This document shows, in pieces, positions 7,767-64,000 of a stretch of DNA of 64,000 bases. The stretch is from Macrostomum lignano (Eukaryota). The notes below the pieces were generated by a model. That model was not told the origin of the DNA and searched no databases. It saw nothing but the letters and a program-made list of their open reading frames with translations. The stretch lies in assembly GCA_002269645.1 (NCBI GenBank), contig NIVC01003194.1, positions 62,001 through 126,000 on the forward strand, written 5' to 3'. The position numbers were made by a program, and so were the translations under genes. Each line of letters begins with the position of its first letter. Positions within the stretch are counted from its first letter, which is position 1.

Positions 7767-7767
7767 C

Positions 7768-7826
<59 letters not shown>

Positions 7827-7847
7827 CACAGACAGACAGACAGACAA

Positions 7848-7890
<43 letters not shown>

Positions 7891-7947
7891 CACAGACAGA
7901 CAGACAGACAGACAGACACACAGACAGACACACAGACAGACAGACAC

Positions 7948-8030
<83 letters not shown>

Positions 8031-8031
8031 C

Positions 8032-8062
<31 letters not shown>

Positions 8063-8063
8063 C

Positions 8064-8114
<51 letters not shown>

Positions 8115-8165
8115 CACAGACAGACAGAAATACAGACACACGGACAGACAGACAGACAGACAGAC
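7573..8165. repeat. (GACA)n microsatellite
   Basis: Direct inspection; explains the QTDR and VCLS pseudo-ORFs. Confidence 0.97.
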
Positions 8166-8166
8166 A

Positions 8167-8405
8167 GGGTGAGATTTCCTAGCTTCTAGGAGTGAGATTT
8201 CCTAGCTTCTAGGAGTGAGATTTCCTAGCTTCTAGGAGTGAGATTTCCTAGCTTCTAGGAGTGAGATTTCCTAGCTTCTAGGAGTGAGATTTCCTAGCTT
8301 CTAGGAGTGAGATTTCCTAGCTTCTAGGAGTGAGATTTCCTAGCTTCTAGGAGTGAGATTTTCTAGCTTCTAGGGGTGAGATTTCCCAGCTTCTAGGGGT
8401 GAGAT
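8167..8405. repeat. 23-bp tandem array with internal hairpin
   Basis: Unit GTGAGATTTCCTAGCTTCTAGGA, about 10 copies, containing TCCTAG-CTT-CTAGGA. Confidence 0.95.
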
Positions 8406-9742: not shown

Positions 9743-15978
<6,236 letters not shown>

Positions 15979-24700: not shown

Positions 24701-27700
24701 GTCAGTCAGTCAGTCAGTCAGTCAGTCAGTCAGTCAGTCAGTCAGTCAGTCAGTCAGTCAGTCAGTCAGTCAGTCAGTCAGTCAGTCAGTCAGTCAGTCA
24801 GTCAGTCAGTCAGTCAGTCAGTCAGTCAGTCAGTCAGTCAGTCAGTCAGTCAGTCAGTCAGTCAGTCAGTCAGTCAGTCAGTCAGTCAGTCAGTCAGTCA
24901 GTCAGTCAGTCAGTCAGTCAGTCAGTCAGTCAGTCAGTCAGTCAGTCAGTCAGTCAGTCAGTCAGTCAGTCAGTCAGTCAGTCAGTCAGTCAGTCAGTCA
25001 GTCAGTCAGTCAGTCAGTCAGTCAGTCAGTCAGTCAGTCAGTCAGTCAGTCAGTCAGTCAGTCAGTCAGTCAGTCAGTCAGTCAGTCAGTCAGTCAGTCA
25101 GTCAGTCAGTCAGTCAGTCAGTCAGTCAGTCAGTCAGTCAGTCAGTCAGTCAGTCAGTCAGTCAGTCAGTCAGTCAGTCAGTCAGTCAGTCAGTCAGTCA
25201 GTCAGTCAGTCAGTCAGTCAGTCAGTCAGTCAGTCAACTCTCTAGCGTGTCCTCTCCCTCATCACACCCCCTGACTTCATTCGCTTTTGAGCCCAGAAGA
25301 AAATTGGACTGCCGCTACACTAATTAGCGCCAGAGGAGAGGCATGCAGCCAGCATGGATTCCTACCGCCAGCTTTGAGCATTTCGGCTTTTTTCTCAACT
25401 CGTCGAGTCGATGATGAGGGAGCGCGTTAGACAGAACTCTAAGTGTAGCTGGGAAGGGACTTTTAGGGGACTAATGATGGGGGACTTTAGAGCATACACA
25501 GTCGCTAGTTTTGCAAGCGATAATGCATGGTCAAAGAGGAACTTTTCAACCACAGCAGGCGTACACGTGTACGCCTTTCCACATCTCAGAGGGCAGAGCA
25601 CATTTGCAAATCATTCAATTCACTTTCTTCTCACTTAACCTGCTGTAAAAGTTACAGCTGCATTTCCGCGCACTTGTCCTCACCTCAGCCTCCCCCCCCC
25701 CTTTCATCGCAGATCCTCATCGTGCGCCGCCGGCTGGCAGTCCAGGAAGAGCAGCTGGCCTCATTTCTGTCCGCCGTGAGGAAGTACTCGAGCCAGCTTG
25801 AAGGTGTCACATCCTGCCTCTTGTAAGTCGCGCGTGTGGACGCTTCGTTTGACCTGCCATGCCCGCATGTGCATGTATCTGTGTTCTCATCTCCGTGTTC
25901 TCCCTCCTCCTTCATCTGCCAGCTCTCATTCTCTCTTCCCCTAATCCCCTTCATCCGGGTTGTCGATACAATTGAACAAGAAAAACAAGAGCCTATCTGC
26001 TACATGTAGCTTGTAATTTTTGTGTCGGGGGGCTTTTTTGGAGGGTAGAGGGGGTAGGAAGGGAGAGAGCGGAGACGAATCTTGAGCTTAAGATGAGCAC
26101 TGCAATTTCTACTGCATGCATGTATTCACCGGGGTTGAAATGTGAGTCAGTTGATTAATGCAGACAAGTCCTGTGCCGTATTGTGCTTACATGTATGCAT
26201 GCTTTGACAGAAGGGACACATTAGGTACTAAATATTAGAGTTGCCTTTAAGGTGTACATTACGTACTTCAGTAGATAAAGGTTTTAGAAGCGAGTTTTCG
26301 GTGGGCTATGAGGTAGATAGCTTGAGTTTGCAGTGGAGTGTGAGGTAGATAGCTTGAGTTTGCAGTGGAGTGTGAGGTAGATAGCTTGAGTTTGCAGTGG
26401 AGTGTGAGGTAGATAGCTTGAGTTTTCAGTGGAGTGTGAGGTAGATAGCTTGAGTTTGCAGTGGAGTGTGAGGTAGATAGCTTGAGTTTTCAGTGGAGTG
26501 TGAGGTAGATAGCTTGAGTTTGCAGTGGAGTGTGAGGTAGATAGCTTGAGTTTGCAGTGGAGTGTGAGGTAGATAGCTTGAGTTTGCAGTGGAGTGTGAG
26601 GTAGATAGCTTGAGTTTGCAGTGGAGTGTGAGGTAAATAGCTTGAGTTTGCAGTGGAGTGTGAGGTAAATAGCTTGAGTTTGCAGTGGAGTGTGAGGTAG
26701 ATAGCTTGAGTTTGCAGTGGAGTGTGAGGTAGATAGCTTGAGTTTGCAGTGGAGTGTGAGGTAGATAGCTTGAGTTTGCAGTGGAGTGTGAGGTAGATAG
26801 CTGGAGTTTGCAGTGGAGTGTGAGGTAGATAGCTTGAGTTTGCAGTGAGTTGTGAGGTAGATAGCTTGAGTTTGCAGTGAATTGTGGGGTAGATAAATGA
26901 GTTTGCAGTGGGTTTAGGGAGATGGTTCTTGTATTAGGAGTGAGCTATGCAGAAGCAAATTAACCAGGGGCTTATAGCAGATACGGCCTAACAATGCCAG
27001 ATGATATCGCACAGCATCAACCCCCCCCCCAGCATGATGTATTGATTACTATCCCTGGGCAAAGCTCGCATGCGGAGCAGTTGGGATTAATATACAATCC
27101 TGTCAGGATCCTTTATGAAATTTAGAACATACTGGCACCAAATCTCCCACGTGAACAATAGAAAATCGCAATTACTCATTGACGCGTGCAAAAACATACA
27201 TTTTATGTATGGCTTTGATGAAGCTTAAGTTAACTGGGTTCTGCATGACAGAGTTTTCATGCATCTTAGGCAGTTATAAGGTGTATCCCCAATCGCTATA
27301 TAACCTGGATAAACAACATTAGCTATAAGTCAGGTTGGCAGTAGCTAGTCCTGCGCCAGATAACAGGGGCCAACATATTCATATATGCTCGGACTCTTCA
27401 AGACCAGAGTCTCTGGCTAAGCTCTCAGCTTCTGTATTATTCATAGTCTTTTTCTTTGACTTAGCCCTGATGAGGTCGCAGAGAGCCTCCTTGTCTCTGT
27501 CAACAGCCGCCCCTGGAGCCAGAAGTTTATTTGAGTAATTGCCTCAGCCAGGAGGCTCCATTGCTCTCTGTGAAAGAGAAACTTGAAATACAGTAGCCCT
27601 ATAGCAAACAAAAATAGCACCTAGCCCTGGCAATTATCCATTTGAAGCAATAAATACAGCAAATGTAAATACCCATAGCAACCATAAAATAGCCCTAGCA

Positions 27701-36413: not shown

Positions 36414-38357
36414 TCAGTCTGTCCCGCCGGTGTCCAAGCAGCCCCGCGCGCTCCACACCATCTTGACGCACTCTTCGGCGTCGTTAAACCACCGATGCGG
36501 CCGTCTGACACGACGCTGCAGCAGGCGGATTAGCGACAACAGTCGGGCCTCGAAACGCGAGTTCAGCTCGTTAGCTAAGAGTGGCGCGGAAGTGGAGAAT
36601 GAGGACACGAACTCGGCTACAACCCCGACAGTTGATTCCACCTCTGCTTTGATTGCTGGATCGACAACAAAATTGGCAACATCGTATAAATTGTTTTTAT
36701 CGGCACCCTCGACTTCGCTCTTATCGTCCTTAGCAATCGCATCAATCCATCTAGGCTGCAACGCCAACAAGCCATCATACAGTGGCCAATCATTCTCGCA
36801 AGCAACACAGTCGCAGTCGAACAAATACTGAGCTGCAAGACTTTCTTGACGCTGCTGTTTCGGATGCACAGCCCAATGCAAACCGTAGTTGTCAAGGAGC
36901 TCCTCGCCTTTAGCAATCGGTCGGAGAGCTCGAATCTCCAGTCTCAAACCGGGACAAGTGACTCGCGATACATTCGGATCGCAAGAATGATTAATTAAAC
37001 TAGCCGTTGGATACACAGCCGACCCAATGTCTCTGATAGTCAGTGCAGAAATATCCACTGAGCTGCCATTGTCAGTACTACTACTAGTAGTCAGCCTACT
37101 CGGCGGAGTGGACAATGCAGTTACATCGTGAGCATTGCACGGCACCAGCATCAGATGGCGCAGCAGTGCTGCAACAAGTGGGGCGGCTACATCTAGCTGA
37201 GAATTTGCCTCAGACTCAACACTGAGCAGCAGAGCCATCTGGCAGGCAACGGCGACTCGCTGAGCCAAATCGCGACTCTCTCGCTGTCGTTCTCCAGCTA
37301 CCAAAGCCAGCACCGATTGATAATCGCCAGCAGATCCGAATACCGATTCGAAATCTTTGAAATTCTTTGCCTTAGCAACAGCTTGAGCAACGGAAACCGG
37401 ACCGCCAGCAGCGATCACGGTGGCGAAAGCGAGCCGACCAATGCTCGCATTGAATGCGGAGTCCAACCAGCCAGCCAGCCAGCCGCATTCCACCCTGTGG
37501 ACCGGGTCGTTATCCCGACAATTCTCCGAGCAGAAGCCAACAACTGAGCAGTCGCTACAGGGCAGCAACCGTTGGCAAGGTGCCAAGCAGGCTGAGCAGT
37601 GACTATCGCGAAGATTTGACAGCAGAATGGCGCTAAAAGCCGGCTCAGAGACCAACAGGTCTCCAACATCGACGTCTTCAAGAGTAAGAAGACAGCGACC
37701 GCGACTTTCGTCTGCCAGAGCGAGCTGCACCTTGGCGCTGGCGTGCGGCAGCTGTTGATTAAAATCCCGCAACAACGATTGAGATGCTGCTGCTGGCTGG
37801 GAAACACTTGAGGATTTCGACACTGACATTCTCTTCTGACAGTCAGCGATGCGACCTGTCAGCTTACCGGCCCGCTCGTCGCCATACGGCAACCGTAGAG
37901 CCGCTTCAGCATCGGCTATGGCTTCCGCATAGCAACCGAGACGTTTGAACACCAGCGAACGGTTGGCGAAAGCCACGGCAAGATCCGAGCTACCTGGCTG
38001 GGCGTGCCGGATGCATTCAGAAAATCGCAGCGCCGCTAAACGCAGCAGGCCGCAGTCGAGGGCTTCCAGACCGGCCGAACGAGCTTCCGCTAGGCGAGCT
38101 GGACTCTTGGCGTCGCTAGGCAACGGACGCTGATGCTTTGTCCAGACGGTGGCACTTCTGGCAGCATAGTTAGACCAATCAATCGAGGCAAGCACTCGTT
38201 CGGCAAGGCGAAGTTCGAATTCCATGGATGCCGTGGAATCGTTGAGAATATTGGTTGCTTCGTTTGAGCCTAGCCAGTCAAGAGCTGCGGCTGCGGCTTT
38301 AGTACCGAGCGACTTCATGGACTGCAGCATGCTGCTGCTCTTGACTGGGGATGCCAT
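36414..38357 (-). CDS. SMYD4: SET and MYND domain lysine methyltransferase, SMYD4-like, single exon, 647 aa
   Basis: N-terminal TPR (LAVAFANRSLVFKRLGCYAEAIADAEAAL), split SET (RGRCLLTLEDVDVGDLL), MYND (CSAC..CSDC..FCSENC..HRVEC), LINHSCDPN, ELLDNYG, post-SET FDCDCVAC. The paralog assignment is less certain than the family. Confidence 0.88.
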   Translation of the reverse strand: MASPVKSSSMLQSMKSLGTKAAAAALDWLGSNEATNILNDSTASMEFELRLAERVLASIDWSNYAARSATVWTKHQRPLPSDAKSPARLAEARSAGLEALDCGLLRLAALRFSECIRHAQPGSSDLAVAFANRSLVFKRLGCYAEAIADAEAALRLPYGDERAGKLTGRIADCQKRMSVSKSSSVSQPAAASQSLLRDFNQQLPHASAKVQLALADESRGRCLLTLEDVDVGDLLVSEPAFSAILLSNLRDSHCSACLAPCQRLLPCSDCSVVGFCSENCRDNDPVHRVECGWLAGWLDSAFNASIGRLAFATVIAAGGPVSVAQAVAKAKNFKDFESVFGSAGDYQSVLALVAGERQRESRDLAQRVAVACQMALLLSVESEANSQLDVAAPLVAALLRHLMLVPCNAHDVTALSTPPSRLTTSSSTDNGSSVDISALTIRDIGSAVYPTASLINHSCDPNVSRVTCPGLRLEIRALRPIAKGEELLDNYGLHWAVHPKQQRQESLAAQYLFDCDCVACENDWPLYDGLLALQPRWIDAIAKDDKSEVEGADKNNLYDVANFVVDPAIKAEVESTVGVVAEFVSSFSTSAPLLANELNSRFEARLLSLIRLLQRRVRRPHRWFNDAEECVKMVWSARGCLDTGGTD

Positions 38358-38519: not shown

Positions 38520-40680
38520 GGTTCGTGTTGCATCTATGGGGTGGTGGTGTATTTATGGCGTGGTGTTGTATCTAGATGGTGATGCTGTATCTATGGCGTA
38601 GTGTGGTGTTGTATCTAGATGGTGATGCTGTATCTATGGTGTGGTGTTGTATCTAGATGGTGATGCTGTATCTATGGTGTGGTATTGTATTTAGATGGTG
38701 ATGCTGTATCTATGGCGTAGTGTTATATTGTATCTAGATGGTGATGCTGTATCTATGGCGTGGTGTTGTATCTAGATGGTGATGCTGTATCTATGGCGTG
38801 GTGTTGTATTGTATCTAGATGGTGATGCTGTATCTATGGCGTGGTGTTGTATCTAGATGGTGATGCTGTATCTATGGCGTGGTGTTGTATCTAGATGGTG
38901 ATGCTGTATCTATGGCGTAGTGTTATATTGTATCTAGATGATGATGCTGTATCTATGGCGTAGTGTTGTATTGTATCTAGATGGTGATGCTGTATCTATG
39001 GCGTAGTGTTATATTGTATCTAGATGGTGATGCTGTATCTATGGCGTAGTGTTGTATTGTATCTAGATGGTGATGCTGTATCTATGGCGTAGTGTTATAT
39101 TGTATCTAGATGGTGATGCTGTATCTATGGCGTGGTGTTGTATCTAGATGGTGATGCTGTATCTATGGCGTAGTGTTATATTGTATCTAGATGGTGATGC
39201 TGTATCTATGGCGTGGTGTTGTATCTAGATGGTGATGCTGTATCTATGGCGTGGTGTTGTATCTAGATGGTGATGCTGTATCTATGGCGTGGTGTTGTAT
39301 TGTATCTAGATGGTGATGCTGTATCTATGGCGTGGTGTTGTATCTAGATGGTGATGCTGTATCTATGGCGTGGTGTTGTATCTAGATGGTGATGCTGTAT
39401 CTATGGCGTAGTGTTATATTGTATCTAGATGATGATGCTGTATCTATGGCGTAGTGTTGTATTGTATCTAGATGGTGATGCTGTATCTATGGCGTAGTGT
39501 TATATTGTATCTAGATGGTGATGCTGTATCTATGGCGTAGTGTTGTATTGTATCTAGATGGTGATGCTGTATCTATGGCGTAGTGTTATATTGTATCTAG
39601 ATGGTGATGCTGTATCTATGGCGTGGTGTTGTATCTAGATGGTGATGCTGTATCTATGGCGTAGTGTTATATTGTATCTAGATGGTGATGCTGTATCTAT
39701 GGCGTAGTGTTGTATTGTATCTAGATGGTGATGCTGTATCTATGGCGTAGTGTTATATTGTATCTAGATGGTGATGCTGTATCTATGGCGTAGTGTTATA
39801 TTGTATCTAGATGGTGATGCTGTATCTATGGCGTGGTGTTGTATCTAGATGGTGATGCTGTATCTATGGCGTAGTGTGGTATTGTATCTAGATGGTGATG
39901 CTGTATCTATGGCGTAGTGTTGTGTTGTATCTAGATGGTGATGCTGTATCTATGGCGTAGTGTTGTATTGTATCTAGATGGTGATGCTGTATCTATGGCG
40001 TAGTGTTATATTGTATCTAGATGGTGATGCTGTATCTATGGCGTGGTGTTGTATCTAGATGGTGATGCTGTATCTATGGCGTAGTGTGGTATTGTATCTA
40101 GATGGTGATGCTATATCTATGGCGTAGTGTTGTGTTGTATCTAGATGGTGATGCTGTATCTATGGCGTGGTGTTATATTGTATCTAGATGGTGATGCTGT
40201 ATCTATGGCGTGGTGTTGTATCTAGATGGTGATGCTGTATCTATGGCGTGGTGTTATATTGTATCTAGATGGTGATGCTGTATCTATGGCGTGGTGTTGT
40301 ATCTAGATGGTGATGCTGTATCTATGGCGTAGTGTTATATTGTATCTAGATGGTGATGCTGTATCTATGGCGTAGTGTTATATTGTATCTAGATGGTGAT
40401 GCTGTATCTATGGCGTAATGTTATATTGTATCTAGATGGTGATGCTGTATCTATGGCGTGGTGTTGTATCTAGATGGTGATGCTGTATCTATGGCGTAGT
40501 GTGGTATTGTATCTAGATGGTGATGCTATATCTATGGCGTAGTGTTGTGTTGTATCTAGATGGTGATGCTGTATCTATGGCGTAGTGTTGTATTGTATCT
40601 AGATGGTGATGCTGTATCTATGGCGTAGTGTTGTATTGTATCTAGATGATGTGATGTATCTATATTAGTATGTTGTATCT
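38520..40680. repeat. 38/43-bp dimeric satellite array
   Basis: Unit GTATCTAGATGGTGATGCT + GTATCTATGGCGTGGTGTT, with a variant 5 bp longer. Confidence 0.96.
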
Positions 40681-41198: not shown

Positions 41199-42569
41199 CT
41201 AAGCAAGCTTTGAACGTTTAGTCGCGGTGGCAGAGTTAGACTCATCTGCGCTCGAATGTTCAAGTTTCTTTTTCATATCGGTGACAACTTCATCTTTGAT
41301 TTTGATACTTTGATTTGAACTCTCCGACGAGGTGCGTTGAGCACTTTCCAAAGTGCGCTCTGTACTTTCAGAAATGCGTTCCAAAGTGCGCTCTGTACTT
41401 TCCGAAGTACAATGTGCACTTTCCGAAGTGCATTTTGAACTTTCCAAAGTGCGTTCTGTACTTTCAGAAATGCGTTCCAAAGTGCGTTCTGTACTTTTCG
41501 AAGTACAATGTGCACTTTCCGAAGTGCATTTTGAACTTTCCAAAGTGCGTTCTGTACTTGGAATCTCGCATTTAGCTTCTTTTTGAGCTTCTCTATCGAT
41601 TTTTTGATTCTGATCAGACTCGGCGAATCGCCATGGAAACCGTTCACTCTTTCGCGTATGCTTAGAAAACAGTCTCAACGGTTGCAGGCGAAGCAACGGC
41701 CTCAGCATCTCTTCGGCATCAATGCCGAGCAGTTCTCTACAGACCAACGCCATGACAAGATCGCAACGAGCATTTATACGCAGATAACTCTGAGCATCTT
41801 TCTTTGTAGGCTGCAGATTAATAATGACTAATTTGCCGCCCATTGTGGGCAGATCGGCGGCCGGAACAATCTGCAAACTGGTGCCCAGAGTCAGATTAAC
41901 GGTAGCCCGACTGGAATGCTCGCGAGCTCGACGAAGATCTACCTGAGGCAGCTGATGCTCCCAGTCTAGCACCGTGTCCAGCATCTGGCCGCCGCAGATG
42001 CCGTCAACACTGTCACCAGCATCGCCACCGGCTTTGACGGATTTCTTTCTGCCTCGCCTAGCCGGAGCTCCGCACCGCCTCCCGGTGGCTTTCTGACCGA
42101 CCGTCTCCACCGGTTGGTCTCTCGCCCGGTGCAAGCCGCACCGGGCGCACCGCTCAACAAACATATCGCCATGCAAAATCGACAACCGATTGCGAGGAAA
42201 TCCAGACCGAAGGTGCAAACCGTCAACATTCTGCGTCACCAGGTAGTGAACGAATCCGGCCGTTTCCAAGGCAACCAGAGCGGCGTGAGTAAGTGTTGGC
42301 TGAGCCTCTTCAAACTTGGCCCCGGCTTCAACTGTTCGACCTTCGCGTTCTAGAGTCCAGACGCCGTTGGGGCCGCGGAAATCCGGGATTCCGGCCGAGG
42401 TGCTGACGCCGGCTCCCGTGTGGACAACGACTCGAGCTCCGGGCTGTCGAATCAGGTCCACCAGCTGACGAGCTTTCAACTCCCAATCGGCTTGGGACTC
42501 GTGAGTTTCGGGCAGGCCCAGAGTGCCTTTGTCCGAGTATTCGGACAGCCCGGCCGAGTAGTTAGCCGA
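41199..42569 (-). CDS. SIRT6: NAD-dependent deacylase sirtuin 6, single coding exon starting at an acceptor (Met supplied in trans or by an unseen exon; alternative in-frame ATG at 42650)
   Basis: SANYSAGLSEYSDKGTLGLPE matches the SIRT6 N-terminus (MSVNYAAGLSPYADKG type). Also HTGAGVSTSAGIPDFRGPNGVWT, TQNVDGLHLRSG, HGDMF, four Zn cysteines, LDTVLDWE, LGTSLQI and INLQPT. Confidence 0.93.
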   Translation of the reverse strand, partial: SANYSAGLSEYSDKGTLGLPETHESQADWELKARQLVDLIRQPGARVVVHTGAGVSTSAGIPDFRGPNGVWTLEREGRTVEAGAKFEEAQPTLTHAALVALETAGFVHYLVTQNVDGLHLRSGFPRNRLSILHGDMFVERCARCGLHRARDQPVETVGQKATGRRCGAPARRGRKKSVKAGGDAGDSVDGICGGQMLDTVLDWEHQLPQVDLRRAREHSSRATVNLTLGTSLQIVPAADLPTMGGKLVIINLQPTKKDAQSYLRINARCDLVMALVCRELLGIDAEEMLRPLLRLQPLRLFSKHTRKSERFPWRFAESDQNQKIDREAQKEAKCEIPSTERTLESSKCTSESAHCTSKSTERTLERISESTERTLESSKCTSESAHCTSESTERTLERISESTERTLESAQRTSSESSNQSIKIKDEVVTDMKKKLEHSSADESNSATATKRSKLA

Positions 42570-42669
42570 CTGGAGGTGGGAGGAAGGAGATGAACTGTTG
42601 GTGTGTTGCCGTACCGACTGTTTTTCTATAACGTTATGGACCCTAATCATCTCTATTCTCTCTAAAAAA

Positions 42670-44110
42670 TCCCTGCCATCTCTAAACCCCCTTAATCTCA
42701 TTTATCTGTTCTCTCCCCCAATCACAGCCATCTCTAATCCCCCTCAATCCCATTTATCTCTGTTCTCTCCCCCAATCACAGCCATCTCTAATCCCCCTCA
42801 ATCCCATTTATCTCTGTTCTCTGCCCCAATCACAGCCATCTCTAATCCCCCTCAATCCCATTTATCTCTGTTCTCTCCCCCAACCACAGCCATCTCTAAT
42901 CCCCCTCAATCTCATATATCTCTGTTCTCTCCCCCAATCACAGCCATCTCTAATCCCCCTCAATCCCATTTATCTCTGTTCTCTGCCCCAATCACAGCCA
43001 TCTCTAATCCCCTCAATCCTATTTATCTCTGTTCTCTCCCCCAATCACAGCCATCTCTAATCTCATTTATCTCTGTTCTCTCCCCAATCACAGCCACCTC
43101 TAATCCCCTTTAATCTCATTTATCTCTGTTCTCTACCCCAACCACAGCCATCTCTAATCCCCTTTAATCTCATTTATCTCTGTTCTCTACCCCAATCACA
43201 GCCATCTCTAATCCCCCTCAATCTCATTTATCTCTGTTCTCTACCCCAACCACAGCCATCTCTAATCCCCTTTAATCTCATTTATCTCTGTTCTCTACCC
43301 CAACCACAGCCATCTCTAATCCCCTTTAATCTCATTTATCTCTGTTCTCTACCCCAATCACAGCCATCTCTAATCCCCTTTAATCTCATTTATCTCTGTT
43401 CTCTACCCCAATCCCAGCCATCTCTAATCCCCTTTAATCTCATTTATCTCTGTTCTCTACCCCAATCACAGCCATCTCTAATCCCCTTTAATCTCATTTA
43501 GCTATGTTCTCTACCCCAATCCCAGCCATCTCTAATCCCCTTTAATCTCATTTATCTCTGTTCTCTACCCCAACCACAGCCATCTCTAATCCCCTTTAAT
43601 CTCATTTATCTCTGTTCTCTCCCCCAATCACAGCCATCTCTAATCTCATTTATCTCTGTTCTCTCCCCCAATCACAGCCACCTCTAATCCCCTTTAATCT
43701 CATTTATCTCTGTTCTCTACCCCAATCACAGCCATCTCTAATCCCCCTTAATCTCATTTATCTCTGTTCTACCCCAATCCCAGCCATCTCTAATCCCCTT
43801 TAATCTCATTTATCTCTGTTCTACCCCAATCCCAGCCATCTCTAATCCCCTTTAATCTCATTTATCTCTGTTCTACCCCAATCCCAGCCATCTCTAATCC
43901 CCTTTAATCTCATTTATCTCTGTTCTACCCCAATCCCAGCCATCTCTAATCCCCTTTAATCTCATTTATCTCTGTTCTACCCCAATCCCAGCCATCTCTA
44001 ATCCCCTTTAATCTTATTTAACTCTGTTCTCTCCCCCAATCACAGCCATCTCTAATCCCCTTTAATCTTATTTAACTCTGTTCTCTCCCCCAATCACAGC
44101 CATCTCTAGC
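42670..44110. repeat. 54-bp tandem array between DGAT1-like and SIRT6
   Basis: Unit CCCAATCACAGCCATCTCTAATCCCCTTTAATCTCATTTATCTCTGTTCTCTAC. Confidence 0.95.
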
Positions 44111-44480: not shown

Positions 44481-47400
44481 TCAAAGATAGTACTGACAGT
44501 AGTCAGCATAGCCCAGTCTAGCTAGCACTGGCAGGCCAAGCACAAGGCAGAGCCAAACGAAGGCATTGTTGCCGAATCTGACGCAGGCGGCATCCAGAAT
44601 GGGCAGCACGATGGCCACAGTGAGCAGAGGCCACGGCTGGGGCGATCGAAGCACTGCGGACACAACCAGCTGGGCCAGGAGAGCCCAGGCTAGACTAGGC
44701 AGATTGAATTCCGCTGCGGATGGCCACACAGACTTCAGCAGGTTGGTCAGGCTTGAAGCATTCCACCAGAGTCGCTTGGTTTGAGTTAGTTTGCTACTGA
44801 TAGTAGTGTCCTCAGCTGAGGGTTTCTGCTGCTGAAAATATTTTTTTGGTGAAAAATGATTTCTTATGTTTCTTTTTGTGGAATTCTTGCGTTACAATGA
44901 TTGGCATGGAAAGGCATTTCCCAAGCAACTTTTAAAGACGATTCCTAAATAACTTCAAAGGGCGATTCCTAAATAACTTCAAAGGGTGATTCCTAAAAAT
45001 CTTAAAAGCTTACACTAAACTTAGAAACGAACAATGAAAAGCTAAAAATAAAGAAATAGCACTTACAAAGTCACTGCCAGACTGAAAGCAGCAATCCATC
45101 AGTTTCAGAATCCGATCCATTGCCGCTCCTGCAGCCAAGCAGACGGCAATAACAGGAGGCGACAGGCGCAGTTGCCTCTCAACCATTACCAGCCAGTAGG
45201 ACGCATTGTACTCGTAGCTATTAGCAGCTGGATCAGATGAGGCGGCAGCTAGAGAAGGCATTAACCACTGTTGAGTCAGAGCCACTATAGCAACTAATAG
45301 TCCTGCTAGTTGAGCAAAGCTAATTAGTAGCATTCTGTTGACACTGACAACCCGAAGTTCAACGAGTTGCCTAGCAATGCGCTGACGCTGCAGGTGCAAA
45401 TTGGTCAGCTTGAGGAACAGAGCCACACTGATTGACATTCCTGCGAAGCCGACAACTGTTGAAGCGGGAATAGCGAGACGGAGGGTTATATTACACCTGA
45501 GTTTATGGAGTGCATTAACACACCTGGGTTTTATATGGGGTACATTAACACACCAGGGTTTTAAGGGTACAGAGAAGTATTTCAAAAAAGCTTTAATAAA
45601 TCAAGGTATTCAAGGCTGCTCATAACACACTACTCAACCCAAGTTTAAAGATAATAGGAAATACTCACTGGGCGAAGGCCTAGACCACAGCACAATGCAA
45701 GCGGGAGCCACCAGAAGCAGACAGGCACTGCTGGCCACTCCGAGCCTCCGATAGCCAGAAGAAGCGGCAAAAGCAGACGCATTCAGAGCGGCAAAAGCAA
45801 CGCAGACCAGGCCGGCAATGCAGGCTGGACCGCCTCCAACAGCCAGGCAGCTAAGAGGATTTCCAGCCAGAGGGCCGTATCTTAGATGGGACTCTAACAG
45901 ACAGCGAGCGATGCACATCGATAGAAGGATTAGCAATGGGCTTAGTAGGCCTCTGAAAGCGCCTCTGCTTTGGCCTAATTGGCCTGGCCGACTTAGCAGA
46001 CTGTCTGCTGGACTGTGGATCTGCCGACGCCTGGAAGCATTTCCAGCAGGGAAGAGATGCGTCAGGTGAACTATTGAGTATGTTGATATTCAATTAATGG
46101 GATTTAATTTAAGATTTCATTTAAGGTTGTTTAAACATGTAAATTAAAAGCAAGCCCAGGTCTTTGGATTTTTTGTACAGATTGTAAAATCGAATTATAA
46201 TTTTAAGATAAGTAAATGAAATTAGAGCATTATCTAAATTAGCCTGTAACCTAGGTCCTAGATTTGATACTTGAGACAGAAGATACCACCTGAGAGAGTA
46301 GATACCACCTGAGACAGTAGATACCACCTAAGAGACTGTAGATACCACCTGAGAGACAGTAGATACCACCTGAGAGACAGTAGATACCACCTGAGAGAGT
46401 AGATACCACCTGAGAAACAGTAGATACCACCTGAGAGACTGTAGATACCACCTGAGAGACAGTAGATACCACCTGAGAGACTGTAGATACCACCTGAGAG
46501 ACAGTAGATACCACCTGAGACAGTAGATACCACCTGAGAGACAGTAGATACCACCTGAGAGACAGTAGATACCAACTGAGACAGTAGATACCACCTGAGA
46601 CTGTAGATACCACCTGAGAGACTGTAGAGTGTAGATGCCACCTAAGAGACAGTAGATTCCACCTGAGAGACAGTAGATACCACCTGAGACAGTAGATACC
46701 ACCTGAGACTGTAGATACCACCTGAGAGACTGTAGAGTGTAGATGCCACCTAAGAGACAGTAGATACCACCTGAGAGACTGTAGATACCACCTGAGAGAC
46801 AGTAGATACCACCTGAGAGACAGTAGATACCACCTGAGAGACTGTAGATACCACCTGAGAGACAGTAGATACCACCTGAGAGACAGTAGATACCACCTGA
46901 GAAACAGTAGATACCACCTGAGAGACAGTAGATACCACCTGAGACTGTAGATACCATCTGAGAGACTGTAGAGTGTAGATGCCACCTAAGAGACAGTAGA
47001 TACCACCTGAGAGACTGTAGATACCACCTGAGAGACTGTAGATACCACCTGAAGAGACAGTAGATACCACCTGAGAAACAGTAGATACCACCTGAGAGAC
47101 AGTAGATACCACCTGAGACTTTAGATACCACCTGAAAGACTGTAGAGTGTAGATGCCACCTAAGAGACAGTAGATACCACCTGAGAGACTGTAGATACCA
47201 CCTGAGAGACAGTAGACACCACCTGAGAAACAGTAGATACCACCTGAGAGACTGTAGAGTGTAGATGCCACCTAAGAGACAGTAGCTACCATCTGAGAGA
47301 CAGTAGATTATGTAGATACCATCTAAGAGACAGTAGATGCCACCTAAGAGACAGTAGATACCACCTGAGAGACTGTAGATACCACCTGAGAGACAGTAGA

Positions 47401-48233
47401 TACCACCTGAGAAACAGTAGATACCACCTGAGAGACTGTAGAGTGTAGATGCCACCTAAGAGACAGTAGCTACCATCTGAGAGACAGTAGATTATGTAGA
47501 TACCATCTGAGAGACAGTAGATGCCACCTAAGAGACAGTAGCTACCATCTGAGAGACAGTAGATTATGTAGCTACCATCTAAGAGACAGTAGCTACCATC
47601 TGAGAGACAGTAGCTACCACCTAAGATGAGACAGTAGATACCTCTGGCACCCTGGTTTTAAATTTGGCATCCTGAATTCGGACACAGGTAACTAGTGATT
47701 TGTCCTAGGTTTTAAAAGATGTAATACAGCAATGCTGATTGCTGGGTAGGACTTGCTTCATTAGCAACAACAGACTACATTTTAATTAGGCCAACTAACC
47801 CATCTTGATCTTCCGGTACGCTTTGCTGCTCCCAGTCGCATTTCAGCCACGCTAGCAACTGCCTACCAACTATACCAACAGCATTGGCTAGGGCAGACGA
47901 TTTCACAATCGATTTTGCACGACTCCTCAAATCGATGTTTAGATAGGACCGACGACTCAAAGTAGACACCGAATCGAACGAATTTGAACGCCTATGACGA
48001 CGCTTCGGTCGAGAACGTTCAATAACGGTTGACGCAGCGGCGCTACTTGATGTAGAATTCGAAGGCTTAGAAGATTTTTCCGGTGTTTTATCAAGGACAT
48101 TCTTCTTTGGCTGAGCAAGTTTAGTAGAGCTCAGAAGGCGATAATGCGAAGGCGACGGAGCAACAGCAGTCGATCCTTCATCATTAGCGTGAACCAAAGG
48201 CGCCACGGCTATAATACCGCTAGTGAGATGCAT
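44481..48233 (-). CDS. Divergent DGAT1-like MBOAT membrane protein lacking catalytic residues; join(48233..47800,46030..45669,45455..45067,44774..44481), 492 aa
   Basis: HSPADSLLS, FRGLL..IARCLLESHLRYG, LFLKL, TQQWLMPSL, VERQLRLSPP, DFRLWWN, FGNNAFVWLCLVLGLPV..YADY align collinearly with DGAT1. Introns are GT-AG with matching phases 2, 1 and 0. Confidence 0.8.
46265..47640. repeat. 21-bp tandem array, DGAT1-like intron 1
   Basis: Unit GAGACAGTAGATACCACCTGA. Confidence 0.95.
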
Positions 48234-49599: not shown

Positions 49600-50940
49600 A
49601 GGAGGAGGAGACAAGAGGAGGGAGACATGAGATAAGAGAGGAGACAGGGGACAAGAGATGGAGGCAGAAGACCAGGGAAGGCAGGAGACTAGTGAGGGAG
49701 ACAGGAGATAAGAAATGGAGACAGGAGACAAGAGAGAAGGCTGGGACAAGAGAGCAAGGCAGGAGACAAGAGAGGGAACAGGAGACAAGAGAGCAAGGCA
49801 GGAGACAAGAGAGGGAGACAGGAGACAAGAGAGGGAGACAGGGGACAAGAGAGGGAGACAGGGGACAAGAGAGGGAGACAGGAGACAAGAGAGCAAGGCA
49901 GGAGACAAGAGAGGGAGACAGGAGGACAAGAGGGAGACAGGGACAAGAGAGGGAGACAGGGGACAAGAGAGGGAGACAGGGGACAAGAGAGGGAGGCAGG
50001 GGACAAGAGAGCGAGACATGGGACAAGAGAGGAAGACAGGGGACAAGAGAGGAGACAGGGGACAGGAGGGGAGACAGGGACAAGAGAGGGAGACAGGGAC
50101 AAGAGAGGGAGACAGGAGACAAGAGAGGGAGACAGGGACAAGAGAGGGAGACAGGGACAAGAGAGGGAGACAGGGACAAGAGAGGGAGACAGGGGACAAG
50201 AGAGGGAGACAGGGGACAAGAGAGGGAGACAGGGGACAAGAGAGGAGACAGGGGACAAGAGAGGAGACAGGAGACAGAGAGGGAGACAGGGGACAAAGAG
50301 AGGGAGACAGGGACAAGAGAGGGACCAGGGACAAGAGAGGGAGACAGGGGACAAAGAGGGGAGACAGGGACAAGAGATGGGAGACAGGGGACAAGAGAGC
50401 GGAGACAGGGACAAGAGAGGAGAACAGGGGACAAGAGAGGAGACAGGGGACAAGAGAGGGAGACAGGGAAGAGAGGGAGCAGGGGACAAGAGGGAGACAG
50501 GGACAAGAGAGGAGACAGGGACAAGAGAGGGAGACAGGGACAAGAGAGGGAGACAGGGGACAAGAGAGGGAGCAGGGGACAAGAGAGGGAGACAGGGACA
50601 AGAGAGGGAGACAGGAGACAGAAGGAGACAGGGACAAGAGAGGGAGACAGGGACAAGAGAGGGAGACAGGGGACAAGAGAGGGAGACAGGGACGAAGAGA
50701 GGGAGACAGATGCGGACTAAGAGAAGGAGACAGGGGACAAAGAGGGAGACAGGGGACAAGAGAGGGAGACAGGGGACAAGAGAGGGAGACATGGGACAGA
50801 GAGGAAGACAGGGGACAAGAGAGGGAGACAGGGGACAAGAGAGGGAGACAGGGGACAAGAGAGGGAGACAGGGGACAAGAGAGGGAGACAGGGGACAAGA
50901 GAGGGAGACAGGAGACAGAGAGGGAGACAGGAGATAAGCG
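49600..50940. repeat. 19/20-bp purine-rich array between MICU1 and DGAT1-like
   Basis: Unit GAGGGAGACAGGGGACAAGA. Confidence 0.95.
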
Positions 50941-51451
50941 GGGAGACAGTATCAATGTTTAGCACTATTTTGTAGCCAGGATAGTAACTACCTAGCAAGG
51001 AATACAAATAAAAGTACAATAAGAACTACAATGTCAGTATCAACTACAGGGACATTATCGTAAATTGTTTCTGTGTATTTTGTTTTACAAATTGAAAACA
51101 AAAACAAAATAGTAATAAAATGGGTAAGAACTTAGAAGCAAAAAGCCGCCATCAGATTTTAAGAAAAGCGCTGACTAAACAGCGAATTGAAAAATAACTA
51201 TATTGGCCAGTAGTGAGGAGGACTCAAAAAAACTCACAGACAATGAATGGGAAGATACCTATGATAAAATTAGCCGATTATGTAAAAATATAAATATAAA
51301 TACTTGTTTGCATATAACAGTATTAATACCAATGGATTCATTGCACAGTATTTCAGTTTACTAGCTATGCAGCTGTCTGGTTAAAATCAAAGCTTAAAAA
51401 TAAATAATTAAATGAGTCTATAATAAGCGGCCTATAATTCAAAATCATAAA

Positions 51452-54400: not shown

Positions 54401-55692
54401 TCTCGAGGTCGAAGTTCGAACAGGCGAGCCGGCTTCTCAATTGCCGGGTCGTAGCGTTCGAAGGAATCGAGCCCGAGACCTTCGGGTTGACGAACACCCG
54501 GAGTCAGGCTGCGAACAAAATCTGCCGGAGTCATGAATATCTGAGGGGACGGATTGTGAGAGCATGAGGGACTTGAAGTCTTAGTTTGGGGATTCGGGAA
54601 CCCCTAAAACCTGGGGATCTGGGAAATCCCAAAACATGAAGGTCTGGAAAACCCAAAAAACCTGAGGATCTGGGAAATCCCAAAACCTGAGGATCTGGGA
54701 AATCCCCAAACCTGAGGATCTGGGAAATCCCAAAACTTGAGAATCTGGGAAATCCCAAAGCCTGAGAATCTGGGAAACTCCAAAGCCTGAGGATCTGGGA
54801 AATCCCAAAACTTGAGAATCTGGGAAATCCGAAAACCTGAGAATCTGGGAAATCCCAAAGCCTGAGAATCTGGGAAACTCCCAAAACCTAAGGATCTGGG
54901 AAATCCCCAGAAGACCTGAGGATCTGGGAAAACCCAAACCCGAGATCTGGGAAATCCTAAAACCTGAGAATCTGGGAAACCCCAAAACCTGAGAATCTGG
55001 AAAATCCCAAAACCTAAAATCTGGGAAATCCCAAAACCTAAAATCTGGGAAATCCTAAAACCTAAAATCTGGGTAATCCTAAAACATGAAGGTCTGGGAA
55101 ACCCCAAAAACCTGAGAATCTGGGAAATCCCAAAATCTGAGAATCTGGCAAATCCAGAGCCTGAGAATCTGGGAAACTCCAAAGCCTTAGGATCTGGGAA
55201 ATCCCAAAACCTGAGGATCTGGGAAACCCCAAAACCTGAGAATCTGGAAAATCCCAAAACCTGAGAGTCCGAGAAACGCAAAATAACCCGAGGATGTGGG
55301 ATTTTCAAACAGAAGCAAAAGAAATCCCAATCACTAACAGTGGTGTTGCCATCAGAATCAACAGTCTGCAGCGTGGCAAAGTAGCGAAATATTTTGTCTG
55401 GCGTGCTGTAAGCTCGGATTCGGTCCTCGTAAGCAATTATTCGACGCTCGCGAAAGCCCAGCCTCTTTCGCTTCGAAGCGGCAGCCTCATTATTGGTTAC
55501 ATTTTCGTCCTCTTTAGACAGTTCCTTGGCCTGAACAACTCGACGAAAAGCGAGGACAAGACCGCCAAAAGTTACAGCTGCAACAGTGGCGGCGGCCAAC
55601 CCCAGACCCGTTCGCCTTGGCCTTTGATCTTCGCCGCCGCAGTAATTGGCAGTGTCCTCAGTCCCGCCACTATCGCATTGGCATATTGACTC
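51452..55692 (-). CDS. MICU1: Mitochondrial calcium uptake protein 1; join(55692?..55339,54540..54235,53519..53361,52802..52536,51726..51452), apparent 1-nt frameshift near 52621
   Basis: [49 protein letters not shown]-hand [30 protein letters not shown]-hand [13 protein letters not shown]. Introns are phase-consistent. The 5' end and targeting peptide are unresolved. Confidence 0.9.
51797..52500. repeat. Array of about 28 bp, last MICU1 intron
   Basis: Unit about AGCAGCTGAGGATCTGGGAGGCTGGCCC. Confidence 0.94.
52975..53190. repeat. 22-bp array, MICU1 intron
   Basis: Unit TGTGACTCACTACTGACCCAGR. Confidence 0.92.
53640..54070. repeat. 23-bp array with internal inverted repeat, MICU1 intron
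   Basis: Unit GGTAATATTTGAAGCCTATTACT; junctions form TATTAC-TG-GTAATA. Confidence 0.92.
54580..55285. repeat. Array of about 25 bp, first MICU1 intron
   Basis: Unit about CCCAAAACCTGAGGATCTGGGAAAT. Confidence 0.92.
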
Positions 55693-63330: not shown

Positions 63331-64000
63331 AAGTTAAGGTTCAGGTGCAGTTTAGGTTAGAGTGTAGTTTAGGGTTTAGGTTACGGTTCAGATCAGGGTC
63401 TAGGTTAGGGTCCAGTTTAGGGTTTAGGTTACGGTTCAGATCAGGGTCTAGGTTAGGGTCCAGTTTAGGGTTTAGGTTACGGTTCAGATCAGGGTCTAGG
63501 TTAGGGTCCAGTTTAGGGTTTAGGTTACGGTTCAGATCAGGGTCTAGGTTAGGGTCCAGTTTAGGGTTTAGGTTACGGTTCAGATCAGGGTCTAGGTTAG
63601 GGTCCAGTTTAGGGTTTAGGTTACGGTTCAGATCAGGGTCTAGGTTAGGGTCCAGTTTAGGGTTTAGGTTACGGTTCAAATCAGGGTCTAGGTTAGGGTC
63701 CAGTTTAGGGTTTAGGTTACGGTTCAGATCAGGGTCTAGGTTAGGGTCCAGTTTAGGGTTTAGGTTACGGTTCAGATCAGGGTCTAGGTTAGGGTCCAGT
63801 TTAGGGTTTAGGTTACGGTTCAGATCAGGGTCTAGGTTAGGGTCCAGTTTAGGGTTTAGGTTACGGTTCAGATCAGGGTCTAGGTTAGGGTCCAGTTTAG
63901 GGTTTAGGTTACGGTTCAAATCAGGGTCTAGGTTAGGGTCCAGTTTAGGGTTTAGGTTGCGGTTCAGATTAGGGTCTAGGTTAGGGTCCAGTTTAGGGTT
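63331..64000 (+). repeat. 48-bp telomere-like higher-order repeat, running off the window end
   Basis: Unit TTTAGG GTTTAG GTTACG GTTCAG ATCAGG GTCTAG GTTAGG GTCCAG: eight hexamers, with two exact TTAGGG per unit. Confidence 0.92.

What the first reader, a model, noticed from the sequence alone, without database searches (positions are those of the whole stretch)
44481..48233. Intact DGAT1-like gene that has lost its catalytic machinery (candidate MBOAT pseudoenzyme)
Seen: four exons, open frame, DGAT1-collinear helices. However, FYxDWWN is DFRLWWN, the FWQNWN segment is LLKSVW, the FFHEY segment is LLAQL, the last exon contains no histidine at all, and the APTLCY loop region is missing. Established: DGAT1 catalysis needs the His of FFHEY (human H415) and the Asn of WQNWN (N378). 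Inference: a non-catalytic ER scaffold, lipid sensor or dominant-negative dimer partner kept under selection.
Basis: partly seen in the sequence, partly recalled or inferred. Interest (0 to 1): 0.7.

Follow-up and report, generated by a model that had tools for sequence, protein, structure and literature searches.

The report
Catalytically dead DGAT1 relative in flatworm
This is an intact, transcribed gene of the flatworm Macrostomum lignano that descends from the fat-making enzyme DGAT1 but has lost its catalytic histidine and its acyl-CoA entrance, so it is most likely a non-enzymatic membrane protein, an uncommon but not unprecedented fate for this enzyme superfamily.

Summary
The gene is real: four exons on the minus strand (48233 to 44481), GT-AG introns and a 511-codon open frame. 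The organism is Macrostomum lignano. RNA-seq-derived GenBank models confirm exons 2-4.

Ordinary searches do not find DGAT1 (phmmer against PDB and against 1.84 billion proteins; no Pfam domain). Directed tests do: hhalign gives 95.5% probability, E=1.5e-8, over 328 collinear columns covering human DGAT1 63-477. 42 of 126 animal/plant-invariant DGAT1 positions are kept.

Catalytic losses:
- H415 is Ala448, E416 is Gln449 and Q465 is Leu495.
- The acyl-CoA entrance helix and most of loop IL1 (including APTLCY) are deleted.
- There is no His after residue 286.

- Exon 4 starts at 44831, so the motif reads TKRLWWN, not DFRLWWN.
- The Asn378 equivalent appears to be kept (N438).

Selection: against a 1.5%-diverged paralogue, dN/dS is 0.54. 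The CDS has no indels where about 10 are expected (P=3e-5). This indicates relaxed but real constraint.

The best-kept element is TM1, the dimer-swap helix of DGAT1, which fits a dimerising regulator. That role is untested.

Verdict: a DGAT1-branch MBOAT pseudoenzyme, well supported by sequence. Its function is inferred, it is known from one species only, and interest is moderate.

The parts
47800..48233 (-). Exon 1 (codons 1-144 plus 2 nt). It encodes a Ser/Arg/Lys-rich N-terminal region with the basic cluster RPKRRHRR and has no counterpart in the DGAT1 alignment. ATG at 48233, donor GG|GTTAGT.
   Evidence: ORF and junction. Conserved with an intact frame in all four genomic copies. The join to exon 2 is inferred (in frame, GT-AG). 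It is not covered by the 5'-partial GenBank transcripts.
46031..47799 (-). Intron 1 (GT..AG, GC 0.43). It holds a 21-bp minisatellite at 46273-47642.
   Evidence: Repeat length differs between genomic copies.
45669..46030 (-). Exon 2. It encodes the DGAT1 N-terminal contact segment (HSPADSLLS, like human 69-77; 46017-45991), TM1 with ARCLLESHLRYG (like ARLFLENLIKYG; 45909-45874), and TM2-TM3.
   Evidence: BLASTP HSP2 E=1e-3, hhalign, GenBank transcript models P0002, P0243 and P0244, coordinates.
45456..45668 (-). Intron 2 (GTGAGT..CAACAG, GC 0.39).
   Evidence: The junction matches the GenBank proteins.
45067..45455 (-). Exon 3. It encodes TM4 with LFLKL (45420-45406), a short remnant of loop IL1 (45408-45337; human 244-274 including APTLCY is absent), TM5 with QQWLMP (45273-45256) and TM6 with ERQLRLSPP (45180-45154).
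44832..45066 (-). Intron 3 (GTAAGT..TTTCAG, GC 0.31). It ends in a NAGNAG acceptor (CAGCAGCAG, 44837-44829).
   Evidence: Both QQK and QK forms occur in database proteins.
44481..44831 (-). Exon 4. It encodes the IL2 remnant with RLWWN (44774-44760) and FNLPS (44708-44694, N438 = human N378), then TM7 with WALLAQL in place of SxxxHEY (44687-44667). A448 (44675-44673) replaces the catalytic His and Q449 replaces Glu. TM8 follows, then TM9 with GNNAFVWLCLVLGLP (44573-44529, L495 replaces Q465). Stop TGA at 44483-44481.
   Evidence: No His codon in this exon.

Best explanation
The locus is an expressed four-exon gene of Macrostomum lignano. It encodes a 511-residue membrane protein with nine predicted transmembrane helices that descends from DGAT1, the DGAT1/ACAT branch of the MBOAT acyltransferases. 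It can no longer carry out the DGAT reaction by the known mechanism.

**Shown**
- It is homologous to DGAT1 along the whole membrane domain.
- The catalytic His-Glu pair is replaced by Ala-Gln.
- The thioester-holding Gln is replaced by Leu.
- The amphipathic helix that forms the acyl-CoA entrance is deleted.
- Most of loop IL1, which forms the floor of the reaction chamber, is deleted.
- The reading frame and splice sites are intact in four genomic copies.
- Constraint since the copies diverged is relaxed but detectable.

**Inferred**
- The protein sits in the ER membrane like DGAT1 and keeps the MBOAT-like helix bundle.
- Its best-kept parts are TM1/EL1 and the preceding N-terminal segment, which are the domain-swapped dimer elements of DGAT1, together with TM6 and TM9. 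It therefore probably still dimerises, with itself or with a catalytic DGAT1.
- It would then act as a non-catalytic regulator or scaffold of neutral-lipid synthesis, much as HHATL is a histidine-less MBOAT that restrains HHAT signalling.
For: **Homology**
- hhalign gives 95.5% probability, E=1.5e-8, 328 columns, query 144-507 against human 63-477.
- BLASTP and MAFFT give the same register.
- The DGAT1 HMM scores 13.4 bits, E=1.4e-6 at Z=1, with four collinear domains. 0 of 6000 shuffles reach it.
- 42 of 126 animal+plant-invariant positions are kept.
- It belongs to the DGAT1 branch, not the ACAT branch: against SOAT2 only the WWN motif matches.

**Loss of catalysis**
- Residue map. No His after residue 286.
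- In human DGAT1, H415A and E416L abolish activity. Mutating W377, N378, H382 or S411 loses more than 80% of activity. Q465 holds the thioester. IL2 forms the acyl-CoA entrance.

**A real gene**
- 0 internal stops against about 20 expected (P~2e-9). Introns are GT-AG and low in GC.
- The GenBank models are RNA-seq derived.

**Constraint**
- dN/dS is 0.54. The non-synonymous rate is below the neutral rate (P=0.03). The CDS has 0 indels against 10.4 expected (P=3e-5).

**Architecture**
- AF2 with a DGAT1 alignment gives nine TM helices, two of them about 40 residues long. pLDDT is 67, and 70-90 in TM5-9.
- The only Foldseek hit of note is human ACAT2, E=4e-3.

**Dimer element**
- TM1 has 17/27 positives and EL1 10/15, the highest of any element.
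- TM1 is the swapped dimer helix that contacts TM6 and TM9 of the partner.

**Precedent**
- HHATL has His replaced by Leu (PMC5831804).
Against: - No database-level sequence search finds DGAT1, and no Pfam MBOAT hit is on record. Homology therefore rests on directed comparisons.
- dN/dS of 0.54 is not significantly below 1 on its own (P=0.12) and is higher than the neighbouring SET gene (0.30).
- No orthologue outside M. lignano was found, so long-term conservation is unknown.
- The AF2 model is guided by DGAT1 sequences and is only moderately confident. TM1 itself has low pLDDT.
- WWN, N438 and the P496 kink are kept, so some acyl-CoA or lipid binding cannot be excluded.
- The presence of a catalytic DGAT1 partner in this species was not checked.
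- The exon 1-exon 2 join lacks transcript proof.
Confidence: 0.7

Rival explanations
1. A duplicated DGAT1 gene drifting towards pseudogene status. It is transcribed and still open by luck or recent history, but has no function of its own.
For: - All catalytic parts are gone.
- No homologue was found outside M. lignano.
- dN/dS of 0.54 is not significantly below 1 (P=0.12).
- 3 of the 4 differences between near-identical copies are non-synonymous.
Against: - Divergence from DGAT1 is extreme (27% identity over aligned columns, about 20 in-frame indels), yet the 511-codon frame has no stop against about 20 expected.
- All four copies keep the frame and the splice sites.
- There are no indels in the CDS against 10.4 expected from flanking non-coding DNA (P=3e-5), and the non-synonymous rate is half the neutral rate (P=0.03).
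- The hydrophobic helix pattern and 42 invariant DGAT1 positions are preserved.
Confidence: 0.15
2. It is still an acyltransferase, or another lipid-modifying enzyme, that uses a non-canonical catalytic centre.
For: - WWN of FYxDWWN, the N378 equivalent (N438), T371, the P466 kink and the overall helix bundle are kept.
Against: - The MBOAT-invariant His is Ala and its partner Glu is Gln. In human DGAT1, H415A and E416L each abolish activity.
- There is no His in the last 225 residues.
- Q465 is Leu. The acyl-CoA entrance helix with H382, Y390 and K400 is deleted, as is IL1.
Confidence: 0.06
3. It is not a DGAT1 relative at all. It would be an orphan multi-pass membrane protein whose resemblance is chance plus shared hydrophobic composition.
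For: - phmmer against PDB at E<=10 gives no DGAT1, and the best hit is an unrelated viral p7 channel at E=0.73.
- There is no Pfam hit.
- The HMM bit score is low (13.4), and window-shuffles reach 10.6.
Against: - hhalign gives E=1.5e-8 over 328 collinear columns, end to end.
- Three alignment methods agree on the register.
- Four HMM domains fall in strict order.
- 42 of 126 invariant positions are kept, including the DGAT1-specific LFLKL, QQWxxP, ERxLxLxxP, WWN and GNxAxVWLxLxxGxP motifs.
- The reversed sequence scores -1.8 bits.
Confidence: 0.04
4. It is a gene-model artefact. The real mRNA would contain further exons that supply the His motif and the missing loops.
For: - The GenBank models are 5'-partial.
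- The UniProt models of the same gene are spliced differently.
Against: - The positions of the missing or substituted segments (IL1, IL2 helix, SxxxHEY) lie inside continuous exons 3 and 4.
- The junctions of those exons are the ones used in three independent RNA-seq-derived GenBank proteins.
- The annotation was built from transcripts.
Confidence: 0.03

Closest known systems
DGAT1 (acyl-CoA:diacylglycerol O-acyltransferase 1; MBOAT family; human structures 6VP0/6VYI/6VZ1)
   Same: - The two align collinearly over the whole membrane domain (human 63-477).
- The DGAT1-specific motifs are kept: TM1 ARxxLExxxxYG, LFLKL, QQWxxP, ERxLxLxxP, WWN and GNxAxVWLxLxxGxP...DY.
- Nine predicted TM helices, with two long central helices.
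- A disordered basic N-terminus.
   Different: - The catalytic H415 is Ala, E416 is Gln, S411 is Trp and Q465 is Leu.
- The IL2 amphipathic helix (380-394) with H382, Y390 and K400 is deleted.
- IL1 is largely deleted, including APTLCY.
- F, Y and D of FYxDWWN are lost.
- Neither the Pfam MBOAT model nor phmmer detects it.
HHATL (hedgehog acyltransferase-like, mammalian Gup1 homologue)
   Same: An MBOAT-family member in which the invariant catalytic His is replaced by a hydrophobic residue (Leu) while the homologous regions are kept. It is described as a negative regulator rather than an enzyme (PMC5831804).
   Different: - It belongs to a different MBOAT branch (protein acyltransferases).
- HHATL is conserved across mammals and keeps its loops. 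Here the loops are also deleted, and the gene is known from one flatworm species only.
SOAT1/SOAT2 (ACAT1/2), sister enzymes of DGAT1
   Same: The FYxDWWN-type WWN motif is shared. Human ACAT2 is the only meaningful Foldseek hit of the model (7n6r_A, E=4e-3, TM 0.43).
   Different: Apart from WWN, nothing in the C-terminal half aligns with SOAT2 (E=0.006 over 15 residues). DGAT1 gives a 216-residue HSP. The DGAT1-specific motifs are absent from SOAT2.

Membership tests
MBOAT superfamily / DGAT1 | Invariant catalytic histidine in a hydrophobic helix (human DGAT1 H415, SxxxHEY motif) | tested here: not met
   SAFFHEY aligns with WALLAQL, so H415 is A448, E416 is Q449 and S411 is W444 by hhalign, BLASTP and MAFFT. 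There is no His after residue 286.
MBOAT superfamily / DGAT1 | Conserved Asn/Asp/His 30-50 residues upstream of the catalytic His (human DGAT1 N378) | tested here: inconclusive
   Three aligners pair WNIPV with FNLPS, making N378 equivalent to N438. The local alignment sits next to a 7-residue insertion and a 27-residue deletion. N438 lies only 10 residues before A448.
DGAT1/ACAT | FYxDWWN motif in loop IL2 | tested here: not met
The sequence is TKRLWWN.
DGAT1 | Acyl-CoA entrance and tunnel: IL2 amphipathic helix 380-394 with H382 and Y390, K400, and Q465 on TM9 | tested here: not met
   Human 382-408 has no counterpart and Q465 is L495. The P466 kink is kept.
DGAT1 | Structured loop IL1 (222-261) with APTLCY, forming the floor of the reaction chamber | tested here: not met
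   27 of the 40 IL1 residues, together with 262-274, align to gaps. None of the 7 invariant IL1 positions is kept, and 6 of them are deleted.
MBOAT superfamily / DGAT1 | Significant match to the family model (Pfam PF03062) or to family members in a database search | tested here: not met
   Precomputed Pfam is '-' for P0001 and P0002. phmmer against PDB finds no DGAT1 at E<=10. phmmer against 1.84e9 proteins finds only itself.
DGAT1 (descent, not activity) | Profile-level, end-to-end collinear homology to DGAT1 rather than to ACAT | tested here: met
   hhalign gives 95.5% probability, E=1.5e-8. The HMM scores 13.4 bits and 0 of 6000 shuffles reach it. 42 of 126 invariant positions are kept. Against SOAT2 only WWN matches.
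DGAT1 | Nine-TM architecture with an isolated TM1 and two ~40-residue helices (TM5, TM6) | tested here: inconclusive
   The AF2 model shows nine TM helices, including H153-190 and H204-245. It was built from an alignment with DGAT1 sequences, so it is circular, and mean pLDDT is 66.7. The hydropathy profile is consistent. The Foldseek top hit is ACAT2 with TM 0.43.
DGAT1 | Acyl-CoA:diacylglycerol acyltransferase activity | not testable with these tools
   This needs expression in TAG-deficient yeast or a microsomal assay.
Pseudoenzyme (as a category) | Homologue of an enzyme, lacking catalytic residues, yet maintained by selection and expressed | tested here: inconclusive
   Homology and residue loss are met. 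Transcript-derived models exist. The ORF is intact in four copies. dN/dS is 0.54 (P=0.12 alone), the non-synonymous rate is below neutral (P=0.03), and the CDS has no indels (P=3e-5). No cross-species orthologue was available.

The most novel reading that the evidence does not exclude
This would be the first DGAT1-branch MBOAT pseudoenzyme. It would be a histidine-less, loop-deleted DGAT1 paralogue kept in several copies in Macrostomum. It would pair with catalytic DGAT1 through the swapped TM1 helix and tune or cap triacylglycerol synthesis, or serve as a lipid or acyl-CoA sensor through the retained WWN/Asn pocket. That would be a DGAT1 counterpart of HHATL.
Probability: 0.15. Interest if true: 0.6.

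Novelty: new variant of a known kind. Interest (0 to 1): 0.42.

Why it matters
DGAT1 is the main triacylglycerol-synthesis enzyme and a drug target. Its dimer is built by a swapped TM1 helix, and regulation through that dimer is poorly understood.

A natural DGAT1 derivative that keeps the dimer element but has shed the active site would be a ready-made probe for non-catalytic roles of the MBOAT fold. It would also be a second example, after HHATL, of a dead MBOAT. M. lignano offers RNAi and transgenesis to test it.

The case also shows that an 'orphan' transmembrane protein without Pfam hits can be placed in a family by profile comparison.

The limits are plain. There is one species, no functional data and only modest evidence for selection.

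Tried and rejected
1. **phmmer against PDB.** The whole protein and exon 4 alone gave no DGAT1 hit. NCBIfam gave nothing.
2. **phmmer of P0002 against 1.84e9 representatives.** It found only itself, so no intermediate relatives were available to build a family profile.
3. **AF2 on the single sequence.** pLDDT was 47, which is unusable, so it was not fold-searched.
4. **dN/dS against NIVC01000305/5049 copies.** There were only 4 substitutions and no non-coding divergence, so this was uninformative. It was replaced by the 1.5%-diverged paralogue on NIVC01001474.1.
5. **Spliced-leader idea.** I considered that the mRNA is SL trans-spliced 10 nt inside exon 2, with the SL AUG in frame (SL sequence from PMC8629364). 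I rejected it because the three GenBank partial models start at three different residues (I149, H150, D153). That points to ragged assembly ends rather than a single acceptor.
6. **UniProt models A0A1I8GF47 and A0A1I8G4D6.** They skip TM1 through a weak internal acceptor, and one has a frame-shifted patch. I treated them as prediction artefacts, because the RNA-seq-derived models contain that region as one exon. The name 'GPI ethanolamine phosphate transferase 3' attached to one of them has no support here.
It is in frame but weak, and no database model uses it.
8. **The last protein search, with human DGAT1.** It returned only tetrapod DGAT1s, so M. lignano's own canonical DGAT1 could not be looked for.
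9. **The long blastn of window against loci.** It was swamped by minisatellites and added nothing.
Full report
**What is there**

The finding's coordinates are exact for a minus-strand gene. The ATG is at 48233 and the stop TGA at 44483-44481. Only one combination of canonical splice sites keeps the frame open with strong acceptors: exons 48233-47800, 46030-45669, 45455-45067 and 44831-44481, giving 511 codons.
- The three introns are GT..AG and lower in GC (0.31-0.43) than the exons (about 0.53).
- The coding frame has no internal stop, while the other five frames of the same spliced sequence have 19-33. From base composition about 20 stops are expected, so P is about 2e-9.
- Intron 1 carries a 21-bp minisatellite at 46273-47642.

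**Organism and annotation**

The protein matches only Macrostomum lignano entries. These are GenBank 'hypothetical protein BOX15_Mlig015824g1, partial' (P0002) and UniProt 'Transmembrane protein' A0A1I8GF47 (P0001). Neither has a Pfam domain.

The GenBank annotation of assembly NIVC01 was built from genome-guided RNA-seq transcripts with TransDecoder ORFs (PMC5730564). P0002 and its cluster mates P0243 and P0244 are therefore transcript evidence for exons 2-4 and their junctions.
- They use the exon-4 acceptor at 44831 or 44828, a NAGNAG site giving ...SDF|QQKPS or ...SDF|QKPS.
- The GenBank models are 5'-partial and start at three different residues (I149, H150, D153). This looks like ragged assembly ends next to the repeat-filled intron 1.
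- The exon 1-exon 2 join is therefore my inference. It is in frame, uses a CTTCCAG acceptor, and without exon 1 the first Met would fall inside TM1.

**Is it DGAT1-like?**

Unbiased searches say no.
- phmmer of the whole protein or of exon 4 against all PDB sequences finds no DGAT1 even at E<=10.
- phmmer against 1.84 billion representative proteins finds only the protein itself.
- NCBIfam finds nothing.

Directed comparisons say yes, and consistently. I first checked that my human DGAT1 sequence is identical to PDB 6VP0 over residues 1-488.
- BLASTP gives two collinear HSPs: query 291-506 against DGAT1 272-476 (E=2e-6), and query 150-209 against 69-123 (E=1e-3). The second includes ARCLLESHLRYG against ARLFLENLIKYG.
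- A Smith-Waterman score for exon 4 against the DGAT1 C-terminus is 70, against 28 +/- 4.7 for 2000 shuffles.
- A 58-sequence C-terminal DGAT1 HMM scores 11.3 bits, E=1.8e-5 for one target.
- A full-length DGAT1 HMM (human, plant and nine tetrapods) scores 13.4 bits, E=1.4e-6, in four domains in strict order. None of 3000 global and 3000 window-preserving shuffles reaches it (maximum 10.6), and the reversed sequence scores -1.8.
- hhalign against the same alignment gives 95.5% probability, E=1.5e-8, with 328 aligned columns covering query 144-507 and human DGAT1 63-477.
- MAFFT of P0002 with 68 DGAT1 sequences reproduces the same register on its own.
- Of 126 positions invariant between human, plant and tetrapod DGAT1, 42 are kept.
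- Against the C-terminal half of human SOAT2, only the WWN motif aligns. DGAT1-specific motifs that SOAT2 lacks (LFLKL, QQWxxP, ERxLxLxxP, GNxAxVWLxLxxGxP) are present. The protein therefore derives from DGAT1, not ACAT.

I take homology as well supported. It is not visible to standard annotation.

**What has been lost**

This uses the hhalign map and the human DGAT1 structure paper (bioRxiv 10.1101/2020.01.06.896332).
- SxxxHEY has become WALLAQL: S411 is W444, H415 is A448 and E416 is Q449. In the human enzyme, H415A and E416L each abolish activity.
- Q465, which holds the thioester carbonyl, is L495. The P466 kink is kept.
- Human 382-408 has no counterpart. This removes the IL2 amphipathic helix (380-394) that forms the acyl-CoA entrance, together with H382, Y390 and K400.
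- Loop IL1 (222-261), part of the floor of the reaction chamber, is mostly gone. So is 262-274, which includes APTLCY.
- None of the seven His residues lies after position 286.
- All these sites lie inside continuous exons 3 and 4, so a hidden exon cannot restore them.

- WWN of FYxDWWN is present (W417, W418, N419).
- In all three alignments, the N378 equivalent is kept (FNLPS against WNIPV, N438).

**What has been kept**

Scored by element (boundaries are taken from the loops given):

| Element | Positives / aligned residues |
|---|---|
| TM1 | 17/27 |
| EL1 | 10/15 |
| IL2 remnant | 15/30 |
| TM7-9 | 31/65 |
| TM5-6 | 35/77 |
| TM2-4 | 28/81 |
| IL1 | 3/13 |

- TM1 is not part of the catalytic MBOAT fold. 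It is the domain-swapped helix that packs on TM6 and TM9 of the partner. The N-terminal residues 64-80 touch the partner's loops. The query keeps HSPADSLLS against HRLQDSLFS at that position.
- An AF2 model made with a DGAT1-containing alignment is circular by construction. Its mean pLDDT is 66.7, with 70-90 over TM5-9 and low values over TM1. It shows nine TM helices, including two of about 40 residues as in DGAT1.
- The model's only meaningful Foldseek hit in PDB is human ACAT2 (E=4e-3, TM 0.43).
- The single-sequence AF2 model was useless, with pLDDT 47.

**Selection**

The DV1 assembly holds four copies.
- One (NIVC01003194.1) has a CDS identical to the window.
- Two (NIVC01000305.1 and NIVC01005049.1) differ by four substitutions, all in exon 3, with no substitution in about 1.8 kb of surrounding non-coding DNA. 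This comparison is uninformative.
- One paralogue (NIVC01001474.1, Mlig030436g1) differs by 23 substitutions and no indel.

Against that paralogue:
- dS=0.023, dN=0.012 and dN/dS=0.54, from 14 non-synonymous and 9 synonymous changes.
- On its own this is not significantly below 1 (binomial P=0.12).
- The neighbouring SET gene gives 0.30 over the same paralogous pair.
- Alignable introns and flanks diverge by 2.4% (39/1618), matching dS. Non-synonymous sites are slower than synonymous plus non-coding sites (Fisher P=0.03).
- The CDS has 0 indel events where 10.4 are expected at the non-coding rate (P=3e-5).

Both paralogues keep A448/Q449. The constraint is relaxed but real, at least on the reading frame. 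Together with the extreme divergence from DGAT1 and the intact frame, this argues against a dead pseudogene. No orthologue from another species was available.

**How it most likely works**

Shown: this is a DGAT1-derived multi-pass membrane protein without the known catalytic centre or acyl-CoA entrance. It is transcribed and kept open.

Inferred: it is an ER membrane protein that still forms TM1-swapped dimers, with itself or with an active DGAT1, and acts without catalysis as a regulator, scaffold or lipid-binding protein.
- I give about 0.7 to 'non-catalytic DGAT1 derivative under some constraint'.
- I give about 0.15-0.25 to the specific dimer-partner mechanism.

Rivals:
- Near-neutral decay: 0.15.
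- Residual non-canonical enzyme: 0.06.
- No true homology: 0.04.
- Gene-model artefact: 0.03.

**Comparison with what is known**

- The nearest family is DGAT1. Membership as an enzyme fails on the defining His, on SxxxHEY, on FYxDWWN (partly) and on the Pfam model. Descent from DGAT1 is supported.
- The nearest functional precedent is HHATL, described as the one MBOAT in which the conserved His is replaced (by Leu) and which restrains rather than catalyses (PMC5831804).
- The paper library holds no article containing both 'DGAT1' and 'pseudoenzyme', and none combining M. lignano with DGAT1. Only one incidental paper contains both 'MBOAT' and 'pseudoenzyme'.

I rate this a new variant of a known kind. 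Interest is moderate (0.42). The placement of an orphan protein in the DGAT1 lineage and its clean loss of the active site are solid. The gene is known from one species, its function is untested, and the presence of a catalytic partner was not checked.

Noticed in passing
window 45067-45455 (exon 3), codons 272, 351, 352, 355; L001/L002/L003: The window (and NIVC01003194.1) differs from NIVC01000305.1/NIVC01005049.1 by four substitutions, all in exon 3 (M272I, S351P, Y352C, V355 synonymous). About 1.8 kb of surrounding introns and flanks has none. Three of the four lie within 13 bp. At those three, the diverged paralogue L003 agrees with L001, so the window allele is the derived one. This could be a multi-nucleotide mutation, a conversion tract or an assembly-polishing difference.
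   Followed up: partly
window 44829-44837: The exon-4 acceptor is a NAGNAG site (CAGCAGCAG), giving QQK or QK forms in database proteins. In paralogue L003 the first CAG is CAA, which forces the downstream site.
   Followed up: partly
window 46273-47642 (intron 1) and 42668-44108 (just 3' of the gene): There are two large minisatellites: a 21-bp unit with about 49-65 copies, and a 54-bp unit with 27 copies. Copy number differs between the genomic copies. The intron-1 array probably explains why the RNA-seq gene models are 5'-partial.
   Followed up: partly
L003 (NIVC01001474.1:187198-202102): The diverged paralogous locus has introns 2 and 3 about 700 bp longer. No SIR2 gene is called between the DGAT1-like gene and the SET gene, unlike the window, L001, L002 and L004.
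   Followed up: no
UniProt A0A1I8G4D6 (P0245) and A0A1I8GF47 (P0001): The same protein carries the name 'GPI ethanolamine phosphate transferase 3' in one UniProt entry, which nothing here supports. Both UniProt models splice exon 1 to a weak internal acceptor (CTAAG|ATACGG) and skip TM1. P0001 also has a frame-shifted patch.
   Followed up: partly
window 41199-42701 (-): A single-exon SIRT6 orthologue (500 aa; E=3e-78 to human sirtuin-6 structures). Its C-terminal tail is built from 21/96-bp tandem repeats (41343-41559) encoding STERTLE-like peptides.
   Followed up: partly
window 54604-55599 (-): An exon of a MICU1-like EF-hand gene (E=1e-15 to mitochondrial calcium uptake protein 1). The ORF runs on into a repeat-derived tail.
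   Followed up: partly
window 36414-38357 (-); 13519-14046 and 15429-15938 (-); 1626-2093 (-): Other genes in the window: a 647-aa SET/SMYD-type ORF (Pfam SET in the public annotation), two exons of an AMPK/SNF1-like protein kinase, and a fragment of a LINE-type reverse transcriptase.
   Followed up: no
window 7340-8182, 21271-22307, 23610-25274, 40000-40663, 49606-50949, 63341-63919: The window is crowded with long minisatellite arrays that create spurious long ORFs in several frames, for example (SVSQ)n over 1.6 kb and a 20-bp unit repeated 69 times. This fits the 15% simple/tandem-repeat content reported for this genome (PMC5730564).
   Followed up: no
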